A stretch of DNA of 59,358 nt, filler included, from Sluysia triapertura (taxonomy: Eukaryota): the NCBI GenBank assembly GCA_046118255.1. It is 5 parts of 5 records of this genome, joined end to end, with 100 filler letters (N's around TTAATTAATTAA, not from the genome) between each part and the next. Parts side by side here need not be neighbours in the genome. Positions count along the whole stretch, not along the records: positions 1 to 13,053 come from JBJNIA010062974.1; 4 more parts are not named here. One strand, written 5' to 3'. Shown piece by piece: positions 1 to 12,779 of this stretch; positions within the stretch are counted from its first letter, which is position 1; every line of letters starts with the position of its first letter. Made by a program: the position numbers and the translations under genes. The notes beneath the pieces are model-generated. The model had not been told where the DNA came from. It worked only from the letters and a program-made list of their open reading frames with translations, and searched no databases.

Positions 1-195
1 TATTATTATTATTATGTTTAATTTATTAAGTTTGATTGCTTAACATGCCAAAATCCATTTAAAAATAATTTAATAAATTAATTAATTTAGCAAGACAAAG
101 AAAACAATATCAATACACCACCAAAGGTTATCTTATTTTATTTGCTTAATAATAATAATAGCATTAAATAAAAAAATTAATTAATTAATTAATTA

Positions 196-212
196 ATAAT
201 AATAATAATAAC

Positions 213-257
<45 letters not shown>
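196..257. repeat. (TAA)n microsatellite
   Basis: Directly visible taa run. Similar (TAA/TTA)n tracts occur at about 11620-11730, 18228-18283, 19020-19150, 22470-22620 and 28745-28820. Confidence 0.95.
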
Positions 258-258
<1 letters not shown>

Positions 259-3200
259 GCAAAAAAGATGTGTTCAACTGAACGTGGTTATTTAAATTTA
301 ATGGTTATTTATATTTTAAAATTAGAACGTGTAAGAGTATTATCTATTAACTTCATAAAAGTTGAAAATGTGTATTTTATAAATAAAATTTAACAAACAT
401 TTTGCATAAAGGAGAAATGTTTAAATGATTAATAAAATATATAGCACCTGAAAGCGAACACTAATTTGGAAGGATATGATTGGTTGTTGAAACAGGTTAA
501 TGCGTTAGAGTATTCTTTTGAATTTGGTGTCAGTGATTTGGAAATAGGTTTTAATAGTTGGTTTTGTTTGGTTTGTAAGATTGATTAGTTTTGTGGTATA
601 TATCCATATGGTTGATTTTAATGGATCGATAATGAGCTTAACACTACTGGATTGTGGAATAGTGTTTCGGGTGAAATGGGTATGCGTGATGTATATTTTC
701 GGGACGTACTGGGTACATTTTATTTTATTTTTTAGTAGTCAAAGTCTATTCTAATAGTTAGTTAAACAGAAAAATGAGTATAATGTCACTAGATTTTTTA
801 TTATCTGCTATTATTTAATCTGGAAACCTACCATATTTATATAATTTGAGCAAGAATTTGATATTCAATATTATATATTAGATACCCATGATAGTTACCT
901 TGGTCATACCTTCGAAGATTCTGCTGTTATCATAGTTTATATAAAATAATATACACTCAATCTTGTAGTTATGACAATTACACTGTTTAAGGATTTTATG
1001 ATCATTCAAAGACAATTTTTATTTCCTAAAACTACATATATCTTGATAACAAACACATTTGTCAAAGAAAATGTGGTTATAAAACGAATATTATCTCCCC
1101 TTCTAATGATGTCGTTGCTAACACTTATTAACTATTACTTAATGATAACTGAAAAACATCGATATTTAAGATTATGCTTATCTATTAGGAATAATAGACT
1201 ACAAATCTTAAACGCATATAAAAACTGTACTAATATGTTATATTAGTATAAAATCTACTACCATGAAAAACTTAAATGACAAGAAAAATAACAAATGAAT
1301 ACACTTATTCAAAATCAGAAAATTTAAAAGCGTCCTCATTAATACCATCTCTGATTCTTTTGCAGTGTCATCGCCCTTTAAAAATGTAATTTTCCGTGAT
1401 TTTATTGCATACAGATTATTCATGCAATCGATTTCGTACCTATGAGAGAGTCCTTTAGCCTTTCTACATGTACTAGTACTAGAAAGTTATTAATATTGTT
1501 TGGGCTTAAAAATATTCATTCAGTACATTTACCTTATCTTGACTTTTGACCGAAAATTTACCTCTTATATTATAATTTGACTTATCCAGTAATCAATATT
1601 TAATAAAGTATCTAAATTAACGTAAGTGCATTTTAGAAAGAAACTATAGTATTACCAGCCATAATTTCAATCTTATAATTAAATTGCTCACTATTGTAAT
1701 TGAAAGATTCTTAAATTATTTAAAACGAAAATAACTTGGCCTATCTAAACAAATTACATTTTTCCTAATAAAAAATGCAATCAAAACGTAAGAAACTTTA
1801 AATGTATTTTTAAAATTAGCTTTATTATGCAAAAATTTTACTATATGACGTTTTAAATTTTCTAAAGCATTATCATAAATTTGCAAGTGTTTCTTTTATA
1901 ACCTTGTGTCTTGCAAAATAGAATTAAATATTCGAGTTCGTCGATATGAACGGTTTATACTACACAGAGAGTATTTATAAATTGAAAGAGCAAATAAGAT
2001 TTTCAATAAATTGGGAACTTCATTCTCGTGGAAGATCCGTCTAAATATGTGTGCGGAATATAAACTAGCTTATGTTAATTAGATACTCCGTTATGATTTC
2101 CTAAAATTCATCCTAAATTATTTCATTTAAATGATTTATACATTTTAATCCTCTACCTATCTGGTTGTTTATAATTTTTTCTAACTTTTTAGATAATAAC
2201 AATATTAAGGTTTATGACCAAAATTAATATAAAATTTTTGTAACAATTATTCAACAGACTGTTATCAATAAAGTGTAATTATGTATAACAAACTTTCGAC
2301 CGTAAATTATTATTATTATTATTAATATTAATAATAATTTGACATATTAAGGCAAATCTTAATATTATTATATTTTTTAATGGATTCTAAAACTAATTTT
2401 AAACTAACTAAAATAAATGATGAATTTAACCCTCACTTTAAATAAGGGAAGCATTTACGATAAACAAAACTGAGTCTTTATGGAATAAAATGAGCTGGAA
2501 CAAGATGAAACGAAGTGACTGTGACTGATTAAATCAGAAGAAACGATAACTTTTTGAAACTTCAATAATATTCTGGAGAACTGATAATATTCTGAAGTTC
2601 ACATCTAATTTAGAGCTTTTTCTATCTACTGAATTTTTGGTTTACTGAGTGCCCTACATACTCGTTTATTCCATCAGACTTCATCCATTAAATTGAAATA
2701 ATCCATTAATTTAGAAAAGTCCATAAATGTAATAATTCATAACTTTTCTTATTTATTGTTTAATGCATTAACAATTACTTTAGATTTTTTTAAAAATCCA
2801 TTAGTTTTTAAAGTATTATTTTGTGTACATTATGTGCATTTATTTTTAAACTTGTAAAAGCTGGACTGGAATTTTCCTGTTGATTGATTACAATCAAACC
2901 TGTTTTTGTGCGATGGATAGGGACCGCATAAAAGAACACATAAAACTTCACGAGTACCTTAAAAAATAGTTTTCGAAAAACGCACAAAAAAAATCGCATA
3001 AAAACAGGTTTGAGTGTACACTTATTTGAATTATAATCTATAATTTCGTTTTGTATTTTCTTAGCAATTTTACGTAATTTTATATGCATTTATAGGATAT
3101 GCCAATGGACTACATAATTAAATTAATGTTCACATTTTGATAATAATTTTTAACTTTTGAATTTTGCCGACAGTTAAATTAAAGAGCTAAATGTAAGTCA

Positions 3201-4082
3201 TCTAACTTACCCTATAAGTGAGCTCAAATAAAGTATAACCTATTTTACTATTTATAGTATCGATTTTTTGTAAATTTATTTATAATAAATCAATTCGATA
3301 TCATTATGCTATAAAGCCCAATTATATAAATTAATAATATCTCATTACAATAAACTAGAAATATTATCTGCTTATAATTACAATTTTATTTTGCTGTAGG
3401 TCCACCAGCAAAATATTCACCAGATATTCAAAATCTTTATTTAATGCAAAGAAATATTTTGATAAATTACTAATATATCTATGATTTTTATTTGCAAAGT
3501 TATGTTTCAAAATTGATATTATTGAATATAAAAACATAAATTGTCATTATTTTGAACATTAATAACACTATGAGCTTGCATTAATCTGACTACTATCTTA
3601 ATATATTAAGTCTGAAAATTTGGTTATAATGAAGTAAACTCTAAATTTTGGTTTGCAACCTAATTGCTACCTAATTCTGTTTATTTCTACTTTTTTATTT
3701 ATTGAATCAGTTACAAAATTTATAAAATCATTCTAGTACACTTTAGCTGGTACAATTCTTTAGCTGCTGGTTGGATTTTAATATTCCCTAATTGATCTAT
3801 AATTTTTCTTAACCTTTCTATCATTTCATTGTAGAAAACTACAGATTTTATATTTTTTCCTTAAAACTTAAAATTTAATGAATATATTTCACTCAGTCTC
3901 TGAATAAATTTATTTTATAATTTCATTTTAAGATAAATAGTTTTTAAGTTTATTTGGAATTAAATTTTTTATTTTATTGTAATTTACAATTTTACAAACA
4001 ATATTATTTTATAATTTAGTAATTAATTAATTCTTACGCATTTCATTTTCACAACAAACATTATGACTGATAAAACAACTAG

Positions 4083-7036
4083 ATAGTGACTTTCTTATGG
4101 AAGATTTATTTAATAATACGTAATGTAATTGAAGTTTATTACTTATTATAGAAAATAATAGAAATTATGGATGAAGAAGAAATATTTGAAGAAGAAGGCG
4201 TAGTAAATATACCAATAATTGTTGTTACGGGCTTTTTGATTTTCTATATGTTTATTGGAGCTGTTTTATTTCGTATTTGGGAAGTAAGTATTAACTCTGT
4301 ATCAGCATTTAAAAAAAAGTAAAAATGATAATTTATTATTTTGTTTACTTGTTAAAGAATACTCATTTTATGAGTAAAATAATGTTTTAATTTACAAACA
4401 CAAACCGCTCAGTTAGCATTATTTAATGTCGCTTTAATTTAATAATTAAAAAATATGAAAATCTGTGTTAAAAACTGTATAAACCAATAATATTTATTAT
4501 TTTTATGTTTATTTTAATTAAGAAATGGACAATTATCGAAGGCATCTATTTTGCCTTCATTACAGTATCTACGATTGGTTTTGGCGATTATTATCCTGCT
4601 AAAGATACAATTGGATCTGTATGTTTATTATTTTAAAATTAAGTACACAATACGAACCATTAATTAGTCTTCCAAAGAACATTGATTAACACTGAATTTT
4701 TATTTTTAGATTTTAAGCTTGTCAAAAGGAGAAAAACTAGAAATACTTGTCTCAAATCTTTTTTAATTACCGTCATCAGTCAGGTTCCTAAGATAATAAA
4801 TTCTAAATATATTTTTGATGAAATTTTGCCATAAGTAAAAATTAATGATTTTCTAGTTAAAAGATGCCGAAAAAAGGGAAAATACTTGGTTTTCAAATAA
4901 TGATGAATAAAAATGGAAACCAAAAATAATTAAGTTTTATTTAAATGTTTACCAACCGTAATAATATTATATATTACTTTATAATAATAATATATCTTAT
5001 GCGTAAGTACTCAAAAGCGCTTAAGGTAAATCATTCCCCACAATATTTCTGAAACAGAAAGAACTTTGCCTTTTTCTTAAATAAATATTTCATAATCTTT
5101 CAGTAATTTGACGTTCTCTGGTAACTACTTGTATATTTTTGAAACATAAACGGTATCACATAGCTTGCTATCACTGTCGATTCTGTATAGATTATTATGT
5201 CTCAATGAATATTCATCTTGGTTTCCAATTTTCGTATTATTTCTAAAAAATATTCAGGACTTCTGTAATGTAAGCATTTGTAAATTATATTCATGATTTT
5301 GAATTCTATTCTTGCTTTTATTGGCAACCAATGTAATTCGTTTTACCTCATACAATATTGTATTTGCTTAAAACATTCTTGTCTTTGATAGGTTTACGTT
5401 GGGAATTTGTTAAAAGCTTCACTAGCATTTAATTTACTTTAGAATAAGCTTCCGATGAGATAAGAGTAGTGAAATGAGGTTTATTTGTTCTCTAATCAGT
5501 TCGTAAAAATGTGACAAACATTTATAATATTTGGTTCTTCAATATTCACTAGCTGATGATCGTGACGGTATTGTGAAGGAACATCATAGATAAATAGTTC
5601 GAAATCCGTTGGTCCTTTTACAGTGAATGTGAAGTAACTTCTTACTTGTACAATTTTGATCCTCTTTAATTAATAAATTAGAAAAGTTAGTACTTATAAA
5701 GTATTCTGAAAGACTTCTATTTTCCGATCTATTATAATGAGGGAGATCCATCATAAAATATTTGTTGATCTCATTAACAACCCGAAATGACCAACGATTT
5801 TCCAAAAAAGAGAACTAATTTTCGAAAAAAGAAAAAGAATTTTATAGAATATTCTAGAAAAATCTGGATTACTACATGCATCTGATTGGCTGCTAGCTAC
5901 TTTATAAAGCTTTGTATAAAAATTGATTACGAAAATGTTGTTGTCGTTGTTCGAAATAACCTGCGTATTTTTACTAATAAATACTGTAACCGACCTGTTT
6001 ATTTTCTCCGTTTTATTAATTCCATGAAATTTTGGTAAGTTATTTGTTGTAAGGTAGAATTAACTCTTGGAGTTAACTTCTTAAAATCTATGTAAAATCT
6101 AATTTCTATATTTTGTTTCTCGATTATAATTATAATTATATTATAATTATTAAAAATTAAAGACCTTAACATGTTTTAATTTTACAAATTCATTTTATTT
6201 ATTCTAAATTCTTATAATTCTTATGTAAAACATAAATTTCAAATCATTTTTTAAGTATGACATTGGTTTACAACTTCTATTGTATAATAAAAATTTTGAG
6301 TTATAAACTAATATAAGTTAATAATTTACTATATTATTTGAAAGAAAATTAAAAAGCTTCAACTCGTAATAAAAATCGCTCTAATACTTCTGTCAAATGT
6401 ATGACAATAATCCAAAGTTATAATAATACATTTCAAAACATCAACTAAGTACATTATTATGAATTAAAACAAGGTGAGTTAAGATAATCAAACAACAAAT
6501 TTCAATAAAACTATAAAACTAAAACTTTATTAATTAGCATGCATGTCTAAAATTCAAATGTATAGCGGTTTATATATTATGCTATTATTCATTTATGATT
6601 GTTAAATTTTAAGTTTGCATACTACATATGATATTTTAAATATCTAAATTTTTTGGCTTAGGATGCTGCCACAATAGAACTTATAATTGGATCAATCTAT
6701 TCTCTCGTTGGCCTTGCTGTATTAAGTATGTGCTTAACTCTAATACAGGAAGAGATTTATGAAAAATTTAACTGGATCGGGTCGAAATGCGGTATCGTTA
6801 AAACTCATCAAGAATTAGACAACGAAATAGATACGACAATTAATGCTGCATCTATAATTTCAGGACCTATATCTGTTAACAAAACCTCGACCGATTTTGA
6901 TTCAAATTATGATGAAAGTAAACCGGTTCGAGTCAATAAGCACATGGAATTTCAAAATGAAACATATTACGACTCTATCAATGATCTAAAAGGAATGTTT
7001 AATGCATCGCAAATTGACAATAAAAAATCAATTTGA
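4083..7036 (+). CDS. Two-pore-domain (K2P, TWIK/TWK-like) potassium channel, 3' part. Exons about 4083-4124 (tentative), 4152-4283, 4523-4618 and 6662-7036; 5' exons not found
   Basis: Phase-0 GT-AG exons join in frame: M3 'NIPIIVVTGFLIFYMFIGAVLFRIWE', P2 loop 'WTIIEGIYFAFITVSTIGFGDYYP' with the TIGFG selectivity filter, and M4 'IYSLVGLAVLSMCLTLIQEE'. The stop is TGA at 7034-7036. Confidence 0.92.
5000..5345 (-). mobile_element. L2-clade LINE 3' remnant inside the K2P intron
   Basis: The minus strand encodes 'ELHWLPIKARIEFKIMNII', the L2 ORF2 C-terminal motif. The DNA is visibly similar to 47707-47920. Confidence 0.85.
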
Positions 7037-7137
7037 ATTTTATTATTTGTACTACAAAAATATAATTAAAAATTATTTAAGTATAGCAAAGATATTAGCA
7101 TTTGTAAATGTAGTTATTTTGTTTTATATAGTACTAG

Positions 7138-8298
7138 ATGAAGAATATATTAAATTACGCAATTTCTAAAAATTATAATTTTGATAATTATAAAAAAATC
7201 AATAACCTGATCATGTGTAACGATGATAATGAAGTTGAGAAGGTTACGGTATCTAGCGATAATGAAGAAGAAGATGATAATATAAATGTAACAATCAATT
7301 TCGATTCTTCTACGAACAACGAAGTGAAATTAAGTTTTAAGAATTATGTGAACCTAGCTATAAATTCCTTATACGATATTATCTTAATTTTAATAAACTC
7401 AGGAAAATTAAGTTATGGCGACTACGTTGAAAGCGGAAGACTTGAATCAATGATAAGAAGAACTGAATGTAATACAAATGCGTCAACAGTTAAAAGTGGT
7501 ATGTCCGCCCTTCGAGTAATATTAAAATCACTGAAGTTCATTCGGAATATTATATCATTGGCTTACTTCCTTTTTATTTTGATAGCAAATTTACCTTTAA
7601 CTATTTTTCAGAACTTTATTCGTTTATTGAAATGTGTTACTGATACAGAACGCTTGTGGATCGTTCCATTTAGATTATCAGCAACTTCGTATTATTGGAC
7701 AATATATTCTATTCCGAACAGTTTCACGTGCAGAGATAGATTGGTGCCATCAAAATGTTCAATTAAATCTTTCAATTTGAGTAACACTACTACGTCAAAT
7801 AATGATAATTGCCTTAGTAAATGCGAGAATATTTATGATACAACTATAAAAAAATGTACTACAGTTGTTGCAATAATTTGCATTATTTTTGTCGCTGGTC
7901 ATTTAAGTCGAAGTACATCTGGAAATTATGACATTGAAAGTGTAGCTATTTTTGCTATGCTTCTAACATTTTATGTATGCACTAAGATTTTTGATTCTGG
8001 TTATTTATATTTGTCTGTTCAGTGTTTATTGGTTATTTTATTTTTATTAAAAACATATCTACCATACTTTGTCATGAATATTATGATGTTAATTAATCTT
8101 GTCGCTTCATTAAATGTTCTAATTATATGTTCCCTTTTAATCATTTCGGGCCTTAAGCCCATGTTTGTAAATAGAAATAGAATTGATTCAAATAGTTTTA
8201 TTTTAATTACGATTTGTTTAATTAAAGGAATGTATAAACTAAAATACATAATAATGCCCTCCACACTTCACTATTGTTTGTTAATATTTCATTCATAA
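7138..8298 (+). CDS. 386-aa intronless multi-TM protein containing an STT3 (oligosaccharyltransferase)-derived segment
   Basis: Long open frame in AT-rich DNA. 'GHLSRSTSGNYDIESVAIFAMLLTFYVCTKIFDSG...LINL' (from about 7897) matches the recalled STT3 '[35 protein letters not shown]...LINL'. The N-terminal 250 aa are not STT3-like. Confidence 0.65.
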   Translation: MKNILNYAISKNYNFDNYKKINNLIMCNDDNEVEKVTVSSDNEEEDDNINVTINFDSSTNNEVKLSFKNYVNLAINSLYDIILILINSGKLSYGDYVESGRLESMIRRTECNTNASTVKSGMSALRVILKSLKFIRNIISLAYFLFILIANLPLTIFQNFIRLLKCVTDTERLWIVPFRLSATSYYWTIYSIPNSFTCRDRLVPSKCSIKSFNLSNTTTSNNDNCLSKCENIYDTTIKKCTTVVAIICIIFVAGHLSRSTSGNYDIESVAIFAMLLTFYVCTKIFDSGYLYLSVQCLLVILFLLKTYLPYFVMNIMMLINLVASLNVLIICSLLIISGLKPMFVNRNRIDSNSFILITICLIKGMYKLKYIIMPSTLHYCLLIFHS

Positions 8299-8332
8299 AT
8301 AAGGTGTTTGATTAAAATAAAATATAAAAAAT

Positions 8333-8536
8333 TTTGGGAACCTTTCCCCATCCGAGTTCTTTGCCAAAATCAAAGCAGAGCCACGCCCTTTTGGATGCGA
8401 TAAGGATGAAAATCACGACATCATTAAAAGGCTATTCCTCGACGCCGTGCCAGACATAGTCAAGGCAGTTCTGGTCCTCTTTGAGGGCATTGGTTCAAAT
8501 ACCACTCCTGACATCATTGTGATGGTCGAGTTGTAA
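8333..8536 (+). mobile_element. Ty3/gypsy gag fragment (GC-rich island)
   Basis: Abrupt rise in GC. The frame reads 'GNLSPSEFFAKIKAE...IIKRLFLDAVPDIVKAVL', resembling the gypsy gag pattern 'GDRKPSELLRRM...LRELFLQRLPxxVxAIL'. Confidence 0.5.
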
Positions 8537-9524
8537 TTGAATTACGAAATTTGTGTTACAATAAATGATTAAAAAATGGTCTCTATTAAATTAATTTACA
8601 AAACTTGGACTTAAGGTCCGTACCAAATGTTTATTCAAAATAAAACACAGGCTTAGAGCCAAGAATGAACTCCTTAATTAAAAAACATAAAGCAAAATAA
8701 CAACTTGGCTCATCTATTTCACAATCGATAGTAAAATTTTTATGAGTTATAAAACATAAAATGCACAACATGAATTGTTACCGTGAAATTAAAATTTGAA
8801 TTAACCAAAGGATTACTGAACTGTCTTTCGACACAAACATTAAGTTGTGCATCTCCACGATTGATTTTCATTTCTAGTGCTCCATGATTTACCGTTTCTG
8901 TCTTAATTATATCAGTATTATATATCGTCTCATCATCAGAAGCAACCGCTTTACTAATAACCTAAATCTGGTTTTCTTTTTTAAAATGTAATATTTCGGA
9001 TACTTTCAATTTGATGTCCATAAATTTGTCACTTAAAAAGGCTACTAAGGTAAACGTCTTATTTACATTTGCATTCATATGATATTTGTCAAATGGGATA
9101 ATATTTAAAATTAATCTGAAAGGTTAAAATTTTGAATATTTAAACAAATGTTAATTTTCTAAAAATTTCAGCATATAATAATGAAATTAATAAAAATAGT
9201 AAAAATTATAAAAATGGTAAAATTATAAAAATAATTAAAATAATTAAAATATTAAAATGGTACAAATAACATTGAGAGTGATGATAATGATGGTGTGGAT
9301 GACATTCAGAAGGAAATGAACTATGATATTGATATAAATGATTTTAGTATGAGTTTTGGAGAGCATGATTTGCAGTTTATGTTAATGTAGGAAAGTAACA
9401 ATGAAGTGTATAGGTTGATTATGAAATTTTATAAATGTTGAGGATGACAAAATTATTAACGATAGGCGTGATATAACAAATGCAATAATTTTTTTTAAAT
9501 AAATTCAGTTAAGACATTTTATCC

Positions 9525-9640
9525 TACAGAATTACATTGGTTACCGATAAAATCAATACAAATTCAAAATATTGACCATAATTTATAAATGTTTACAAGT
9601 CTTGAATATCTCTGGGAAATACTAAATTTTAGAAACCCAA
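9525..9640 (+). mobile_element. Diverged L2 LINE 3' remnant
   Basis: 'ELHWLPIKS' followed by frameshifted 'FKILTIIYKCL', homologous to the other L2 copies. Confidence 0.7.
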
Positions 9641-10199
9641 ATGAATGTCAGTAAAATATAATAATGTAAGGAGAATCTACAATTATAGTAAGCTAGGTAA
9701 GAGATCATGTACTCTTTATGTTTCAAAAATATAACCAGCTCTAGATAATGTTAAGTTACTGAAAAATTATGAAATATTTAAGAAAAAGGACAAGATTTCA
9801 GAAATATTATAATGAATAACTTATTGTAAACGGATTTTAATGCAATATAAATTAATGCATTATTAATATTATTATTATTATTATTACTATTATTATTATT
9901 GTGATGGCCGGGTTTATCACGATGATCTTATCATTTATAACAAAACAATTACGAACAAAGTTACAAAATTTGGGCTTAAGGCACGTTCTATCTTTAAAAA
10001 TATCATTATTGTAATTAAGATTAATGAACATGGACTTAAGGTCCTTTTTACTATTAAAATTATTAAAGAAAGCCTTGTAGCAAAAGTAAGAACAAAATTT
10101 TATCACACGTAAAAAATTTTTATAAGAAAAACAGTTAAAATTATATACTTGCAATTTTAATATAGTTAAATTTCGATTCCATAATTGATGTGTGAGACT

Positions 10200-11059: not shown

Positions 11060-12779
11060 ATATCTTTCATAGAGTCATAAAATAAAACATTTGATAATAC
11101 CTCAGAAAATTTTGAAATAAAATTTTAAAAACAAATGCTACACTAAACTTTTAATAATTCGTTCAATTAAGCCTTAGTACATATTATACTTTAATATAAA
11201 ATATGGCGAAAAAATACAAAAATAAAATTCATACATTTTCGAAGTTTGTAAATAATTATACAAATGTTAAAATCTATATTACTTACAAAACACAAATCAA
11301 AGCTTCGTTAAAACAAGCATAAAAAGACACAAAGGCATAAAGAGTCCAAAGAAATATAATTGTTTTCAAAAAGTAATAAATAGTAATATAAAAGGAAAAA
11401 TACAATAATGATGTGAAGTTAATGCATATGAGAGAAGCGATATTGGTGGATTAAACGCAATACTAGTATGATTAATTTCTATAATTTAGGTATATTTATA
11501 ACTTTATTTTAGGTGTTACAGTGTGTACAAGATGTGGTGAAATTGTACAAGATGTAGTGAAAGTGTATTAAATATTTATAATTGATTTTATTGAGAATGT
11601 ATGAATAAGTGGGATACCACAATTATTATTATTATTAATATTGCAGTCATAATAATAATAAGAATAATAATAGTAAGAATAAGAATAATAATAAGAATAA
11701 TAATAATAATAAAGTAATAATAATAATGATCTATATAGTTAATTAAAACAGTAATATAATGCTAACAAATAATCCAGCAGAACAATATTATTAATTGAAT
11801 TACAATTTATATAGATTTATAATGTTGGTTAATGAATTTAAATTATTAACTGTATTGAAATAAATAATATTAACATAATAATAGTATGTTAAAAATATTA
11901 TAATAAATATATGAACACATGAACTGAATTAAGTTAAGAAAAGTCAAATAAAATTTTTACTATAAATAGAGAAGCGATATTATTACAGCTTTGAGATATT
12001 TTTTAGACTACTAATTATTAAATATTCTGAAGTATTCTATATTTGACTATGTATGGAGTATTATCATTTTTTGAAATATATTGGAATATTGATTTTTCAA
12101 TACATTGGTAATCGATATTCGAATAAATAAAATTATCGTATGAAATTTATTGGAGATATATTGGCATTCAGTCAATATAGTTGAATAGTAGTAAGGTTTT
12201 ATTAATTAACATTTAAACATTAAAATTGACCATTATTTGATAATTTCATTAATAAATATGAAGCAAGTATAAAATATAATATAAATAAAATAAAATCCTT
12301 TGTTATTTCGTTAGAGTGTAGAAAATAAATTTTATATTATGTTTTGCAATAATTTTGTAAAATTTTCTTTGTTGTGTTACTAATAAATTTAGAACCTTGT
12401 TAATTTTACAGAAAGATTGAAAGACAAGACTTAAAGGTAATAAATTCATCTTTAGCAACAGAGATGAATATGAACTCAGCGTCCAAGATAAATTTATACT
12501 AAGTCATTTGGAGATGTAATGGAAAACGTTTTTCAACTCATATAAAGAATTCATCAGTGAACCAAACTAACAAAAATACAAATACAAATTAAATTTACAA
12601 AATCAGAAATAGACCAAATAAATATTAAATTATATTACTATTATTATACTTATTATTATACTATTATTCTCGGCATACTCCGGTTTCATTGGGCGTTCCT
12701 GAAACAAAATAACAAATAGAGAAATCTAACTTTAGATTTTCTTACTCTTCAACATACTGCTAGAAAGTCAAAAAGTATA

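What the first reader, a model, noticed from the sequence alone, without database searches (positions are those of the whole stretch)
7138..8298. Open chimeric gene: orphan N-terminus fused to the STT3 catalytic DxE-loop/TM segment
Seen: a 386-codon intronless ORF starts only about 100 bp after the K2P stop, in DNA where random ORFs rarely reach 100 codons. It contains a stretch of about 85 aa (about 7864-8150) matching STT3, with roughly 20 of 45 core residues identical to recalled human STT3A. Known: this loop carries the metal-binding DNE motif (here DIE), whereas true STT3 is about 700 aa and also has WWDYG and DK motifs, which are absent here. Inference: a captured enzyme fragment has been recycled into a new membrane protein and is kept open by selection.
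Basis: partly seen in the sequence, partly recalled or inferred. Interest (0 to 1): 0.72.

Follow-up and report, generated by a model that had tools for sequence, protein, structure and literature searches.

The report
STT3-fragment repeat copy, not unique gene
The 386-codon reading frame with a real STT3-like stretch is one young, neutrally drifting copy of a repeat family present in hundreds of copies in this genome. It is not a one-off chimeric gene held open by selection.

Summary
ORF 7138-8298 exists and residues 244-323 match STT3 (E 1.4e-10 to STT3A). The rest of the ORF has no detectable STT3 similarity, and WWDYG/DK are absent.

The interpretation does not hold. The STT3 piece plus a non-STT3 tail is a repeat unit:
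- Its 15-nt 3' terminus occurs 558 times in the genome (reversed control 0).
- About 71 copies carry the STT3 26-mer.
- At least 110 loci match the ORF at protein level.

Copies share a sharp 3' end at window 8270 and have variable 5' ends and unrelated flanks. The STT3 part lacks the 34-nt introns of the genome's genuine STT3B-like gene. Many copies carry intronless N-terminal fragments of unrelated genes upstream (GH47, bestrophin, amino-acid and sugar transporters, a UBAC2-like gene).

The window's nearest copies are 94-96% identical, give dN/dS of 0.8-1.4 and carry frameshifts. The window's own changes are 6 non-synonymous to 2 synonymous, and they include DNE>DIE.

Best reading: a composite, RNA-mediated, non-autonomous retroposon-like family, analogous to exon-capturing SVA subfamilies. 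No mobilising element, target-site duplication or RNA evidence was obtained.

The parts
7138..8298 (+). 386-codon ORF of the finding. It is a mosaic of repeat modules read through in one frame.
   Evidence: ORF; module-wise matches elsewhere in the genome
7138..7205 (+). Start codon and first ~23 codons, in locally unique sequence between the K+-channel gene's stop and the repeat.
   Evidence: Contig depth in run X1 is 78 in the 7018-7156 bin and about 1250 in the 7157-7295 bin, and loose ends appear at 7205. No other genome match starts before 7216.
7216..7409 (+). Module W: an acidic/Asn-rich stretch, also found at G000:C187578 (90% identity).
7403..7515 (+). Module B1 (KLSYGD..SALR). In another copy (L010) it sits behind an EF-hand-like coding fragment.
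7516..7611 (+). 96-nt GT...AG-bounded, intron-like segment (32 codons, no stop). It is precisely absent from copy L013 and from one contig of run X1.
   Evidence: junction sequences; joint 7515->7612, ends GT..AG
7612..7893 (+). Module X (NFIRLLKCVTDTERLW...). Its start at 7607-7612 is a recurrent junction to at least 5 different upstream sequences. No STT3 similarity is detectable.
7894..8056 (+). STT3-derived fragment (PGY/H-LSRSTSGNYD-I-E-SVAIFAMLLTFY...), corresponding to STT3A residues ~146-226. D-I-E lies at 7930-7938, with the private A>T change at 7934.
8057..8270 (+). Non-STT3 tail shared by all subfamilies. It has a conserved core TTCGGGCCTTAAGCCC (8145-8160) and the terminal motif GCCCTCCACACTTCA (8256-8270). 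Homology to other copies stops at 8270.
6662..7036 (+). Last exon of the neighbouring K+-channel (K2P-like) gene. It is not part of the repeat.
   Evidence: X1 contig spanning 6809-7188

Best explanation
The ORF is one recent copy of a lineage-specific, high-copy composite repeat.

Proposed origin of the family: it began when the 5' ~45% of a processed (intron-less) STT3B-type mRNA became joined to a ~210-bp non-STT3 tail. Copies are anchored at this tail's conserved 3' terminus and are truncated or replaced at the 5' side. Many carry intron-less 5' fragments of other host mRNAs, joined at recurrent acceptor-like points such as window 7612.

Most likely mechanism (inferred, not shown): RNA-mediated, non-autonomous retroposition by an unidentified reverse transcriptase that recognises the tail. 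Host exons would be picked up by splicing or read-through into the element, as in the MAST2- and STK40-SVA subfamilies of hominids.

The window copy: it landed just downstream of a K+-channel gene. It inherited an open frame from its source, has since drifted neutrally (including loss of the Asn in DNE), and has no evident function of its own.
For: Copy number:
- 558 exact 3' termini against 0 for the reversed control.
- 71 STT3 26-mers with up to 3 mismatches against 0 for the control.
- At least 100 Pfam STT3 matches and 112 matches to the ORF.
- X1 contig depth is 13-50 in unique flank and 500-6300 over 7157-8268.

3' anchoring:
- About half of the 45 DNA matches end at window ~8270.
- Flanks beyond that point are unrelated in 19 copies.
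- Tails are about 8x more frequent than STT3 parts.

RNA origin:
- The genuine STT3B-like gene (L004/L050) has 34-nt GT-AG introns exactly where family copies (L001, L005) are contiguous.
- L005 aligns with human STT3B 71-377 without interruption.
- The 96-nt GT..AG segment is removed precisely in L013.

Host-gene fragments upstream, all 5'-proximal and intron-less:
- GH47 profile positions 1-101, Bestrophin 1-215, Aa_trans 7-58, Sugar_tr 101-165.
- A UBAC2-like fragment plus unit, amplified to at least 9 copies and starting near its ATG.

Neutrality of this copy.
Against: - There is no poly(A) or regular microsatellite at the 3' end.
- No target-site duplication of 8 bp or more was found for the window copy.
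- No partner LINE or reverse-transcriptase gene carrying the same tail was identified.
- The tail shows no significant RNA structure (z -0.21) and no Rfam match.
- The STT3-to-tail junction of the longest copy does not coincide with an exon boundary of the extant STT3B-like gene.
- Family-wide omega is below 1: 0.65 for window-type copies (2dlnL about 11) and ~0.75-0.78 for canonical-type copies. Some coding constraint in source lineages therefore cannot be excluded.
- No RNA data were available.
Confidence: 0.75

Rival explanations
1. A DNA-level mechanism spreads the unit. This could be an unrecognised DNA transposon that captures gene fragments (Pack-type or Helitron-like), or repeated segmental duplication. 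Under this reading the RNA-like features are inherited from a single ancestral retrocopy.
For: There is no poly(A) tail and no clear TSD. Internal-deletion derivatives keep both the 5' start (AACTTTATT) and the 3' end, as MITE-like derivatives do. An inverted ~380-bp repeat pair brackets the region.
Against: No terminal inverted repeat matches the 3' terminus, and the ends are not 5'-TC/CTRR-3'. The 5' ends are variable while the 3' end is fixed. Several different host fragments are all intron-less and 5'-proximal. One copy has an exact GT..AG excision.
Confidence: 0.12
2. The copies form a genuine, rapidly expanding multigene family that encodes truncated STT3-like membrane proteins, often fused in frame to N-terminal parts of other membrane or ER proteins. 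The window ORF is a functional member.
For: Many diverged copies keep long open frames of 290-470 aa, some in frame with upstream host fragments. Omega is 0.65-0.78 and significantly below 1. L001-type copies retain the DPWFNY, WFDDKAWYPLGR and DNE motifs.
Against: I chose those loci for their long frames, so there is ascertainment bias. Omega is far above that of a conserved enzyme. Most of the window's closest relatives have frameshifts, and dN/dS is about 1. The element's frame has no stop of its own and runs into the flank. No predicted protein of 212-675 aa in 5.8 billion resembles the ORF. Most contigs break inside the repeat.
Confidence: 0.1
3. One reading: a unique chimeric gene in which a captured STT3 loop/TM fragment was joined to an orphan N-terminus and is maintained by selection at this locus.
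For: The ORF is long for 25% GC DNA, and the STT3 similarity is significant.
Against: The unit is not unique. Private changes are neutral-like and include a hit in the catalytic-loop motif.
Confidence: 0.03

Closest known systems
Non-canonical SVA subfamilies (human SVA_F1 with MAST2 exon 1; chimpanzee STK40-SVA), per PMC6139936
   Same: Both are non-autonomous composite retroposons whose subfamilies arise when 5' exons of host genes are spliced onto an acceptor inside the element and are then co-amplified. Further host exons are added as 5' transductions. Here, a UBAC2-like fragment plus unit is amplified to at least 9 copies, and GH47, bestrophin and transporter fragments are joined at recurrent points.
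   Different: There is no Alu-like, VNTR or SINE-R architecture, no poly(A) tail, and no L1-type TSD was seen. The core of the element is itself a fragment of a protein-coding mRNA (STT3). The mobilising element is unknown. The host is an AT-rich invertebrate-like genome with ~34-nt introns.
Processed pseudogenes / chimeric retrocopies made by LINE reverse transcriptase template switching (e.g. PMC2104539)
   Same: Both show intron-less copies of cellular mRNAs fused head-to-tail with other transcripts, 5' truncation and neutral decay.
   Different: Ordinary retrocopies retain the mRNA's 3' end and poly(A) and are low-copy. Here the STT3 part stops mid-CDS (about STT3B residue 377 at most) and is followed by a conserved non-STT3 tail. 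The unit is present in hundreds of copies.
STT3, catalytic subunit of oligosaccharyltransferase (PF02516 plus C-terminal domain; PDB 6ftj, 6s7t)
   Same: ORF aa 244-323 align to the STT3A 146-226 segment that carries the DNE-type motif. The family's best copies (L001, L005) align to STT3B 71-377.
   Different: The window ORF lacks the N-terminal DxD-containing loop, TM8-13, WWDYG and DK. Its DNE is mutated to DIE. The Pfam score is below the cut-off.
Stringent-type SINE/LINE pairs that share a 3' tail (CR1/L2/RTE-like partners)
   Same: Both have a conserved 3'-terminal sequence without poly(A), 5' truncation, and far more tails than full-length copies.
   Different: No partner LINE was found here, there is no tRNA/5S/7SL head, and the body is mRNA-derived.

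Membership tests
STT3 / oligosaccharyltransferase catalytic subunit | Pfam PF02516 at or above its gathering score | tested here: not met
   16.9 bits against a 24.5-bit cut-off, aa 241-338 only
STT3 / oligosaccharyltransferase catalytic subunit | Full-length architecture: ~700+ aa with N-terminal TM1 and first luminal loop (DxD), later TMs, and a C-terminal domain with WWDYG and DK/MI motifs | tested here: not met
   The ORF is 386 aa. Only aa 244-323 align to STT3A 146-226. There is no similarity of aa 1-243 to the STT3 N-terminus. WWDYG is absent from the translation.
STT3 / oligosaccharyltransferase catalytic subunit | Acidic D-N-E type motif in the loop after TM5 | tested here: not met
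   The window has D-I-E. All seven close copies compared and 31 X1 contigs have A at 7934, which gives DNE.
Non-autonomous non-LTR retroposon (SINE/SVA-like composite) | High copy number with a fixed 3' end, variable 5' truncation and unrelated flanks | tested here: met
Non-autonomous non-LTR retroposon (SINE/SVA-like composite) | Evidence of an RNA intermediate: loss of parental introns and spliced host exons | tested here: met
   The 34-nt introns of L050 are absent from L001/L005. There is an exact GT..AG excision in L013. Host fragments are intron-less and 5'-proximal.
Non-autonomous non-LTR retroposon (SINE/SVA-like composite) | Target-site duplications and a poly(A) or simple-repeat tail | tested here: inconclusive
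   No direct repeat of 8 bp or more flanks the window copy. No poly(A) was seen. Only a few copies are followed by (ATA)n-like repeats.
Non-autonomous non-LTR retroposon (SINE/SVA-like composite) | A partner autonomous element that shares the 3' tail | not tested
None of the 79 loci in hand shows a reverse-transcriptase ORF next to a tail.
Helitron / Pack-type DNA transposon with captured gene fragments | Characteristic termini (5'-TC...CTRR-3' with a subterminal hairpin, or terminal inverted repeats) | tested here: not met
   The 3' end is ...GCCCTCCACACTTCA. The 5' ends are variable, and no matching inverted terminus appears in the alignments. There was no exhaustive TIR search.

The most novel reading that the evidence does not exclude
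Source copies of this family may be translated and selected to keep an open frame. The family would then be an engine that repeatedly fuses N-terminal halves of ER/membrane proteins (GH47/EDEM-like, bestrophin, transporters, UBAC2-like) in frame to a truncated STT3-derived transmembrane module, creating chimeric membrane-protein genes in large numbers.

Three observations leave this open: omega of 0.65-0.78, significantly below 1; many 300-470-codon frames in diverged copies; and retention of the STT3 catalytic-loop motifs in L001-type copies.
Probability: 0.1. Interest if true: 0.7.

Novelty: new variant of a known kind. Interest (0 to 1): 0.35.

Why it matters
For the finding as posed, the result is deflationary. 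The long ORF is explained by recent copying of an already open repeat unit, so it should not be annotated as a new STT3-related gene.

The family behind it is still a useful case. It is a high-copy element whose body is a fragment of an essential ER enzyme's mRNA, and it repeatedly carries spliced 5' exons of other genes. That parallels the exon-trapping SVA subfamilies of hominids, but in a distant, AT-rich, tiny-intron genome.

There are also practical consequences. Such families inflate gene counts: there are more than 100 'STT3' hits here. They seed false chimeric gene models and break assemblies. They also provide raw material for exon shuffling.

Tried and rejected
1. Idea: ORF aa ~126-243 is a degenerate STT3 N-terminus (by eye, ERLWIVPFRL resembles DKAWYPLGRI).
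- Rejected. BLASTP found nothing. Local alignment scored below shuffles. The nhmmer DNA profile of canonical copies hits only 7894-8056. hhalign without the known anchor scored 9.5, against 8-17 for shuffled controls.
- Language-model neighbours of aa 1-243 are GT-C/STT3-like, but at 0.80, which is chance level.

2. Idea: the SGLKP tail is the STT3 'GFQP' region or an intron of the parent.
- L005 shows STT3 continuing to about residue 377 before the tail.
- The tail is absent from the genuine STT3B-like gene.

3. Introner or intron reading of the element: its ends are not GT/AG on either strand.

4. Searches that returned nothing:
- Rfam.
- RNA fold of the tail.
- Exact-protein look-up.
- Word-based protein search, which covers only lengths of 212-675 aa.
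- RNA sequencing runs: none on record.

5. Branch-wise dN/dS needs ancestral states. The machine does not offer ancestral sequences, so I did not pursue it. I used a whole-tree omega with a likelihood-ratio test instead.

Full report
**What is at the coordinates**

The window is G000:C62974, from a 619-Mb genome in 263,945 contigs with about 25% GC. ORF 7138..8298 (+), 386 aa, is present. It starts 101 bp after the stop of ORF 6728..7036. That upstream ORF is the last exon of a K+-channel-like gene, with a pore signature TIGFGD at 4472-4633 and an M4/C-terminus exon at 6662-7036. I did not formally test the K2P assignment.

The STT3 resemblance is genuine but short:
- phmmer against PDB chains gives STT3A at E 1.4e-10 for aa 244-323 against residues 146-226.
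- Pfam PF02516 reaches only 16.9 bits against a cut-off of 24.5.
- The motif reads D-I-E (7930-7938).

**It is not unique**

Four searches of the window's own genome show a repeat:
- The Pfam STT3 model gave at least 100 matches.
- The ORF protein gave 112 matches.
- The DNA of 6900-8700 gave 45 matches at 76-96% identity.
- The 15-nt 3' terminus GCCCTCCACACTTYA occurs 558 times, against 0 for the reversed control. An STT3-part 26-mer occurs 71 times with up to 3 mismatches, control 0.

Most small contigs end inside the repeat. In an independent public run (X1, contigs), summed contig depth is 13-50 over unique flank and 500-6300 over 7157-8268. A second organism's run (X2) holds pieces about 96% identical.

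**Anatomy of the unit**

All copies lose similarity to the window at 8270, right after ...GCCCTCCACACTTCA, and their downstream flanks are unrelated. Within the tail, TTCGGGCCTTAAGCCC (8145-8160) is at least 90% conserved in 27 diverse copies.

The 5' ends vary, with recurrent break points at 7403, 7607-7612 and ~8023. Short forms join the 7612 start directly to ~8023 through a shared TGTTTATTG.

Only 7894-8056 is detectably STT3-derived. The tail is also present behind much longer STT3 segments:
- L001 encodes a near-canonical STT3 N-terminus (DPWFNYR, WFDDKAWYPLGR, SGNYDNEN) followed by the tail.
- L005 aligns with human STT3B 71-377 (E 1.6e-79) before switching to the tail.

**RNA origin**

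The genuine STT3B-like gene of this genome (L004/L050) has 34-nt GT-AG introns after '...GLMVTSG' and '...CFIAI', and a ~100-nt intron after '...ALLQ'. The family copies are contiguous across all three positions.

In the window, the 96 nt at 7516-7611 begin with GTAATA and end with TTTTTCAG. They are exactly missing from copy L013 and from an X1 contig (joint 7515->7612, ends GT..AG).

**Captured host fragments**

Upstream of the unit, different copies carry intron-less 5'-proximal pieces of other genes:
- GH47, profile positions 1-101.
- Bestrophin, 1-215.
- Aa_trans, 7-58.
- Sugar_tr, 101-165 (all).
- An EF-hand-like piece.
- A UBAC2-like piece by eye; Pfam found no match for it.

The UBAC2-like piece plus unit forms a ~1.1-kb composite found in at least 9 copies. 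These begin within ~30 bp of each other near the fragment's ATG and have unrelated flanks.

This is the pattern described for SVA_F1 (MAST2) and the chimpanzee STK40-SVA subfamily, where host first exons are spliced onto the element and co-amplified with further 5' transductions (PMC6139936).

**Is the window ORF under selection?**

Against its four closest copies (94-96% identical), NG86 dN/dS is 1.05, 1.12, 1.36 and 0.81. Most of the close copies carry 1-, 2- or 7-bp frameshifting indels; the contig-end fragment L014 does not.

At sites where all available close copies agree against the window, the window has 8 private substitutions over roughly 650 bp (7612-8270), where at least three close copies overlap. 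Six are non-synonymous and two synonymous; the neutral site ratio is about 3.6:1. One is 7934 A>T, which turns the family's DNE into DIE (confirmed by 31 X1 contigs reading A). With so little private change, an inherited open frame is unsurprising.

Across the family, a GY+F3X4 codon model gives omega 0.65 for 16 window-type copies (2dlnL about 11 against omega = 1). It gives ~0.75-0.78 for 12 canonical-type copies. That is near-neutral but not fully so. Masking of stop codons and source-lineage effects may contribute.

**Mechanism**

Shown:
- A high-copy, 3'-anchored, 5'-variable composite.
- An intron-less STT3 part and intron-less host parts.
- Neutral drift of this copy.

Inferred:
- Retroposition by an unidentified reverse transcriptase that recognises the conserved tail.
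- Exon capture by splicing into acceptor-like sites.

Against or missing:
- No poly(A).
- No TSD of 8 bp or more for this copy.
- No Rfam match and no significant fold for the tail.
- No partner LINE.
- The STT3-to-tail junction is not at an exon boundary of the extant STT3B-like gene.
- No RNA runs are on record.
- No similar predicted protein of 212-675 aa exists in the large collection; the length window limits this search.

**Rejected leads**

My by-eye idea that aa 126-243 is decayed STT3 N-terminus failed four tests. The Atlas feature hits to GT-C families at 0.80 are at chance level. Further loci could not be fetched.

**Verdict**

It is best filed as a new variant of a known kind, a composite, exon-capturing, non-autonomous retroposon-like family with an STT3 mRNA fragment at its core. 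Interest is modest for the ORF itself and moderate for the family.

Noticed in passing
window 4959-5342 (+) and 9513-9884 (-): An inverted pair of a ~380-bp repeat brackets the K+-channel 3' exon and the ORF. The same repeat occurs in loci L042, L014, L020 and L079 (68-84% identity). It could be a MITE-like family or two independent insertions.
   Followed up: partly
window 8330-8535: A GC-richer island directly after the element contains a 71-codon open stretch (8321-8533). It is itself very high-copy (X1 depth ~6900 at 8408-8546) and has no Pfam match. It is probably another repeat family.
   Followed up: partly
window 9103-9500 and 5767-5905, 6045-6183: Further segments show very high summed contig depth in run X1 (1100-4950), so most intergenic and intronic DNA around the channel gene is repeat-derived.
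   Followed up: no
L050 (G000:C206850) 1230-1520 and 600-900, minus strand: The genuine STT3B-like gene has 34-nt GT-AG introns, so this genome has very short introns.
   Followed up: partly
L003 (G000:C248902): A second STT3-like locus matches Pfam positions 2-256 and 224-404, separated by ~3 kb. It is 58% identical to the L001 copy and is possibly the STT3A-type gene of this genome.
   Followed up: no
L040, L041, L039 (G000:C193516, C71129, C212721): Another chimeric subfamily: an unidentified coding-like module ('...HERLF.NTKC..DNL...CENNYSK') is joined to the STT3 part at '...TIYPGLMLTSG', a different junction from the window type.
   Followed up: no
L042 (G000:C242237) about 3460-3840: The STT3 part here runs in frame into sequence that, by eye, resembles a carnitine/choline acyltransferase ('NYEHSVAEG'). 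This is a fusion on the 3' side rather than the 5' side.
   Followed up: no
L043-L046, L065, L069, L074 upstream of the short form: The short (~245-290 bp) forms share a further conserved upstream module ('..GERKEAI.F..RSM..MLNV(Q/K)'), so the 'short form' is part of a longer unit whose 5' limit was not determined.
   Followed up: partly
window 147-257, 9858-9900, 11649-11730: (ATT/ATA)n microsatellites. The same type directly follows or replaces the element's 3' end in copies L010 and L067.
   Followed up: no
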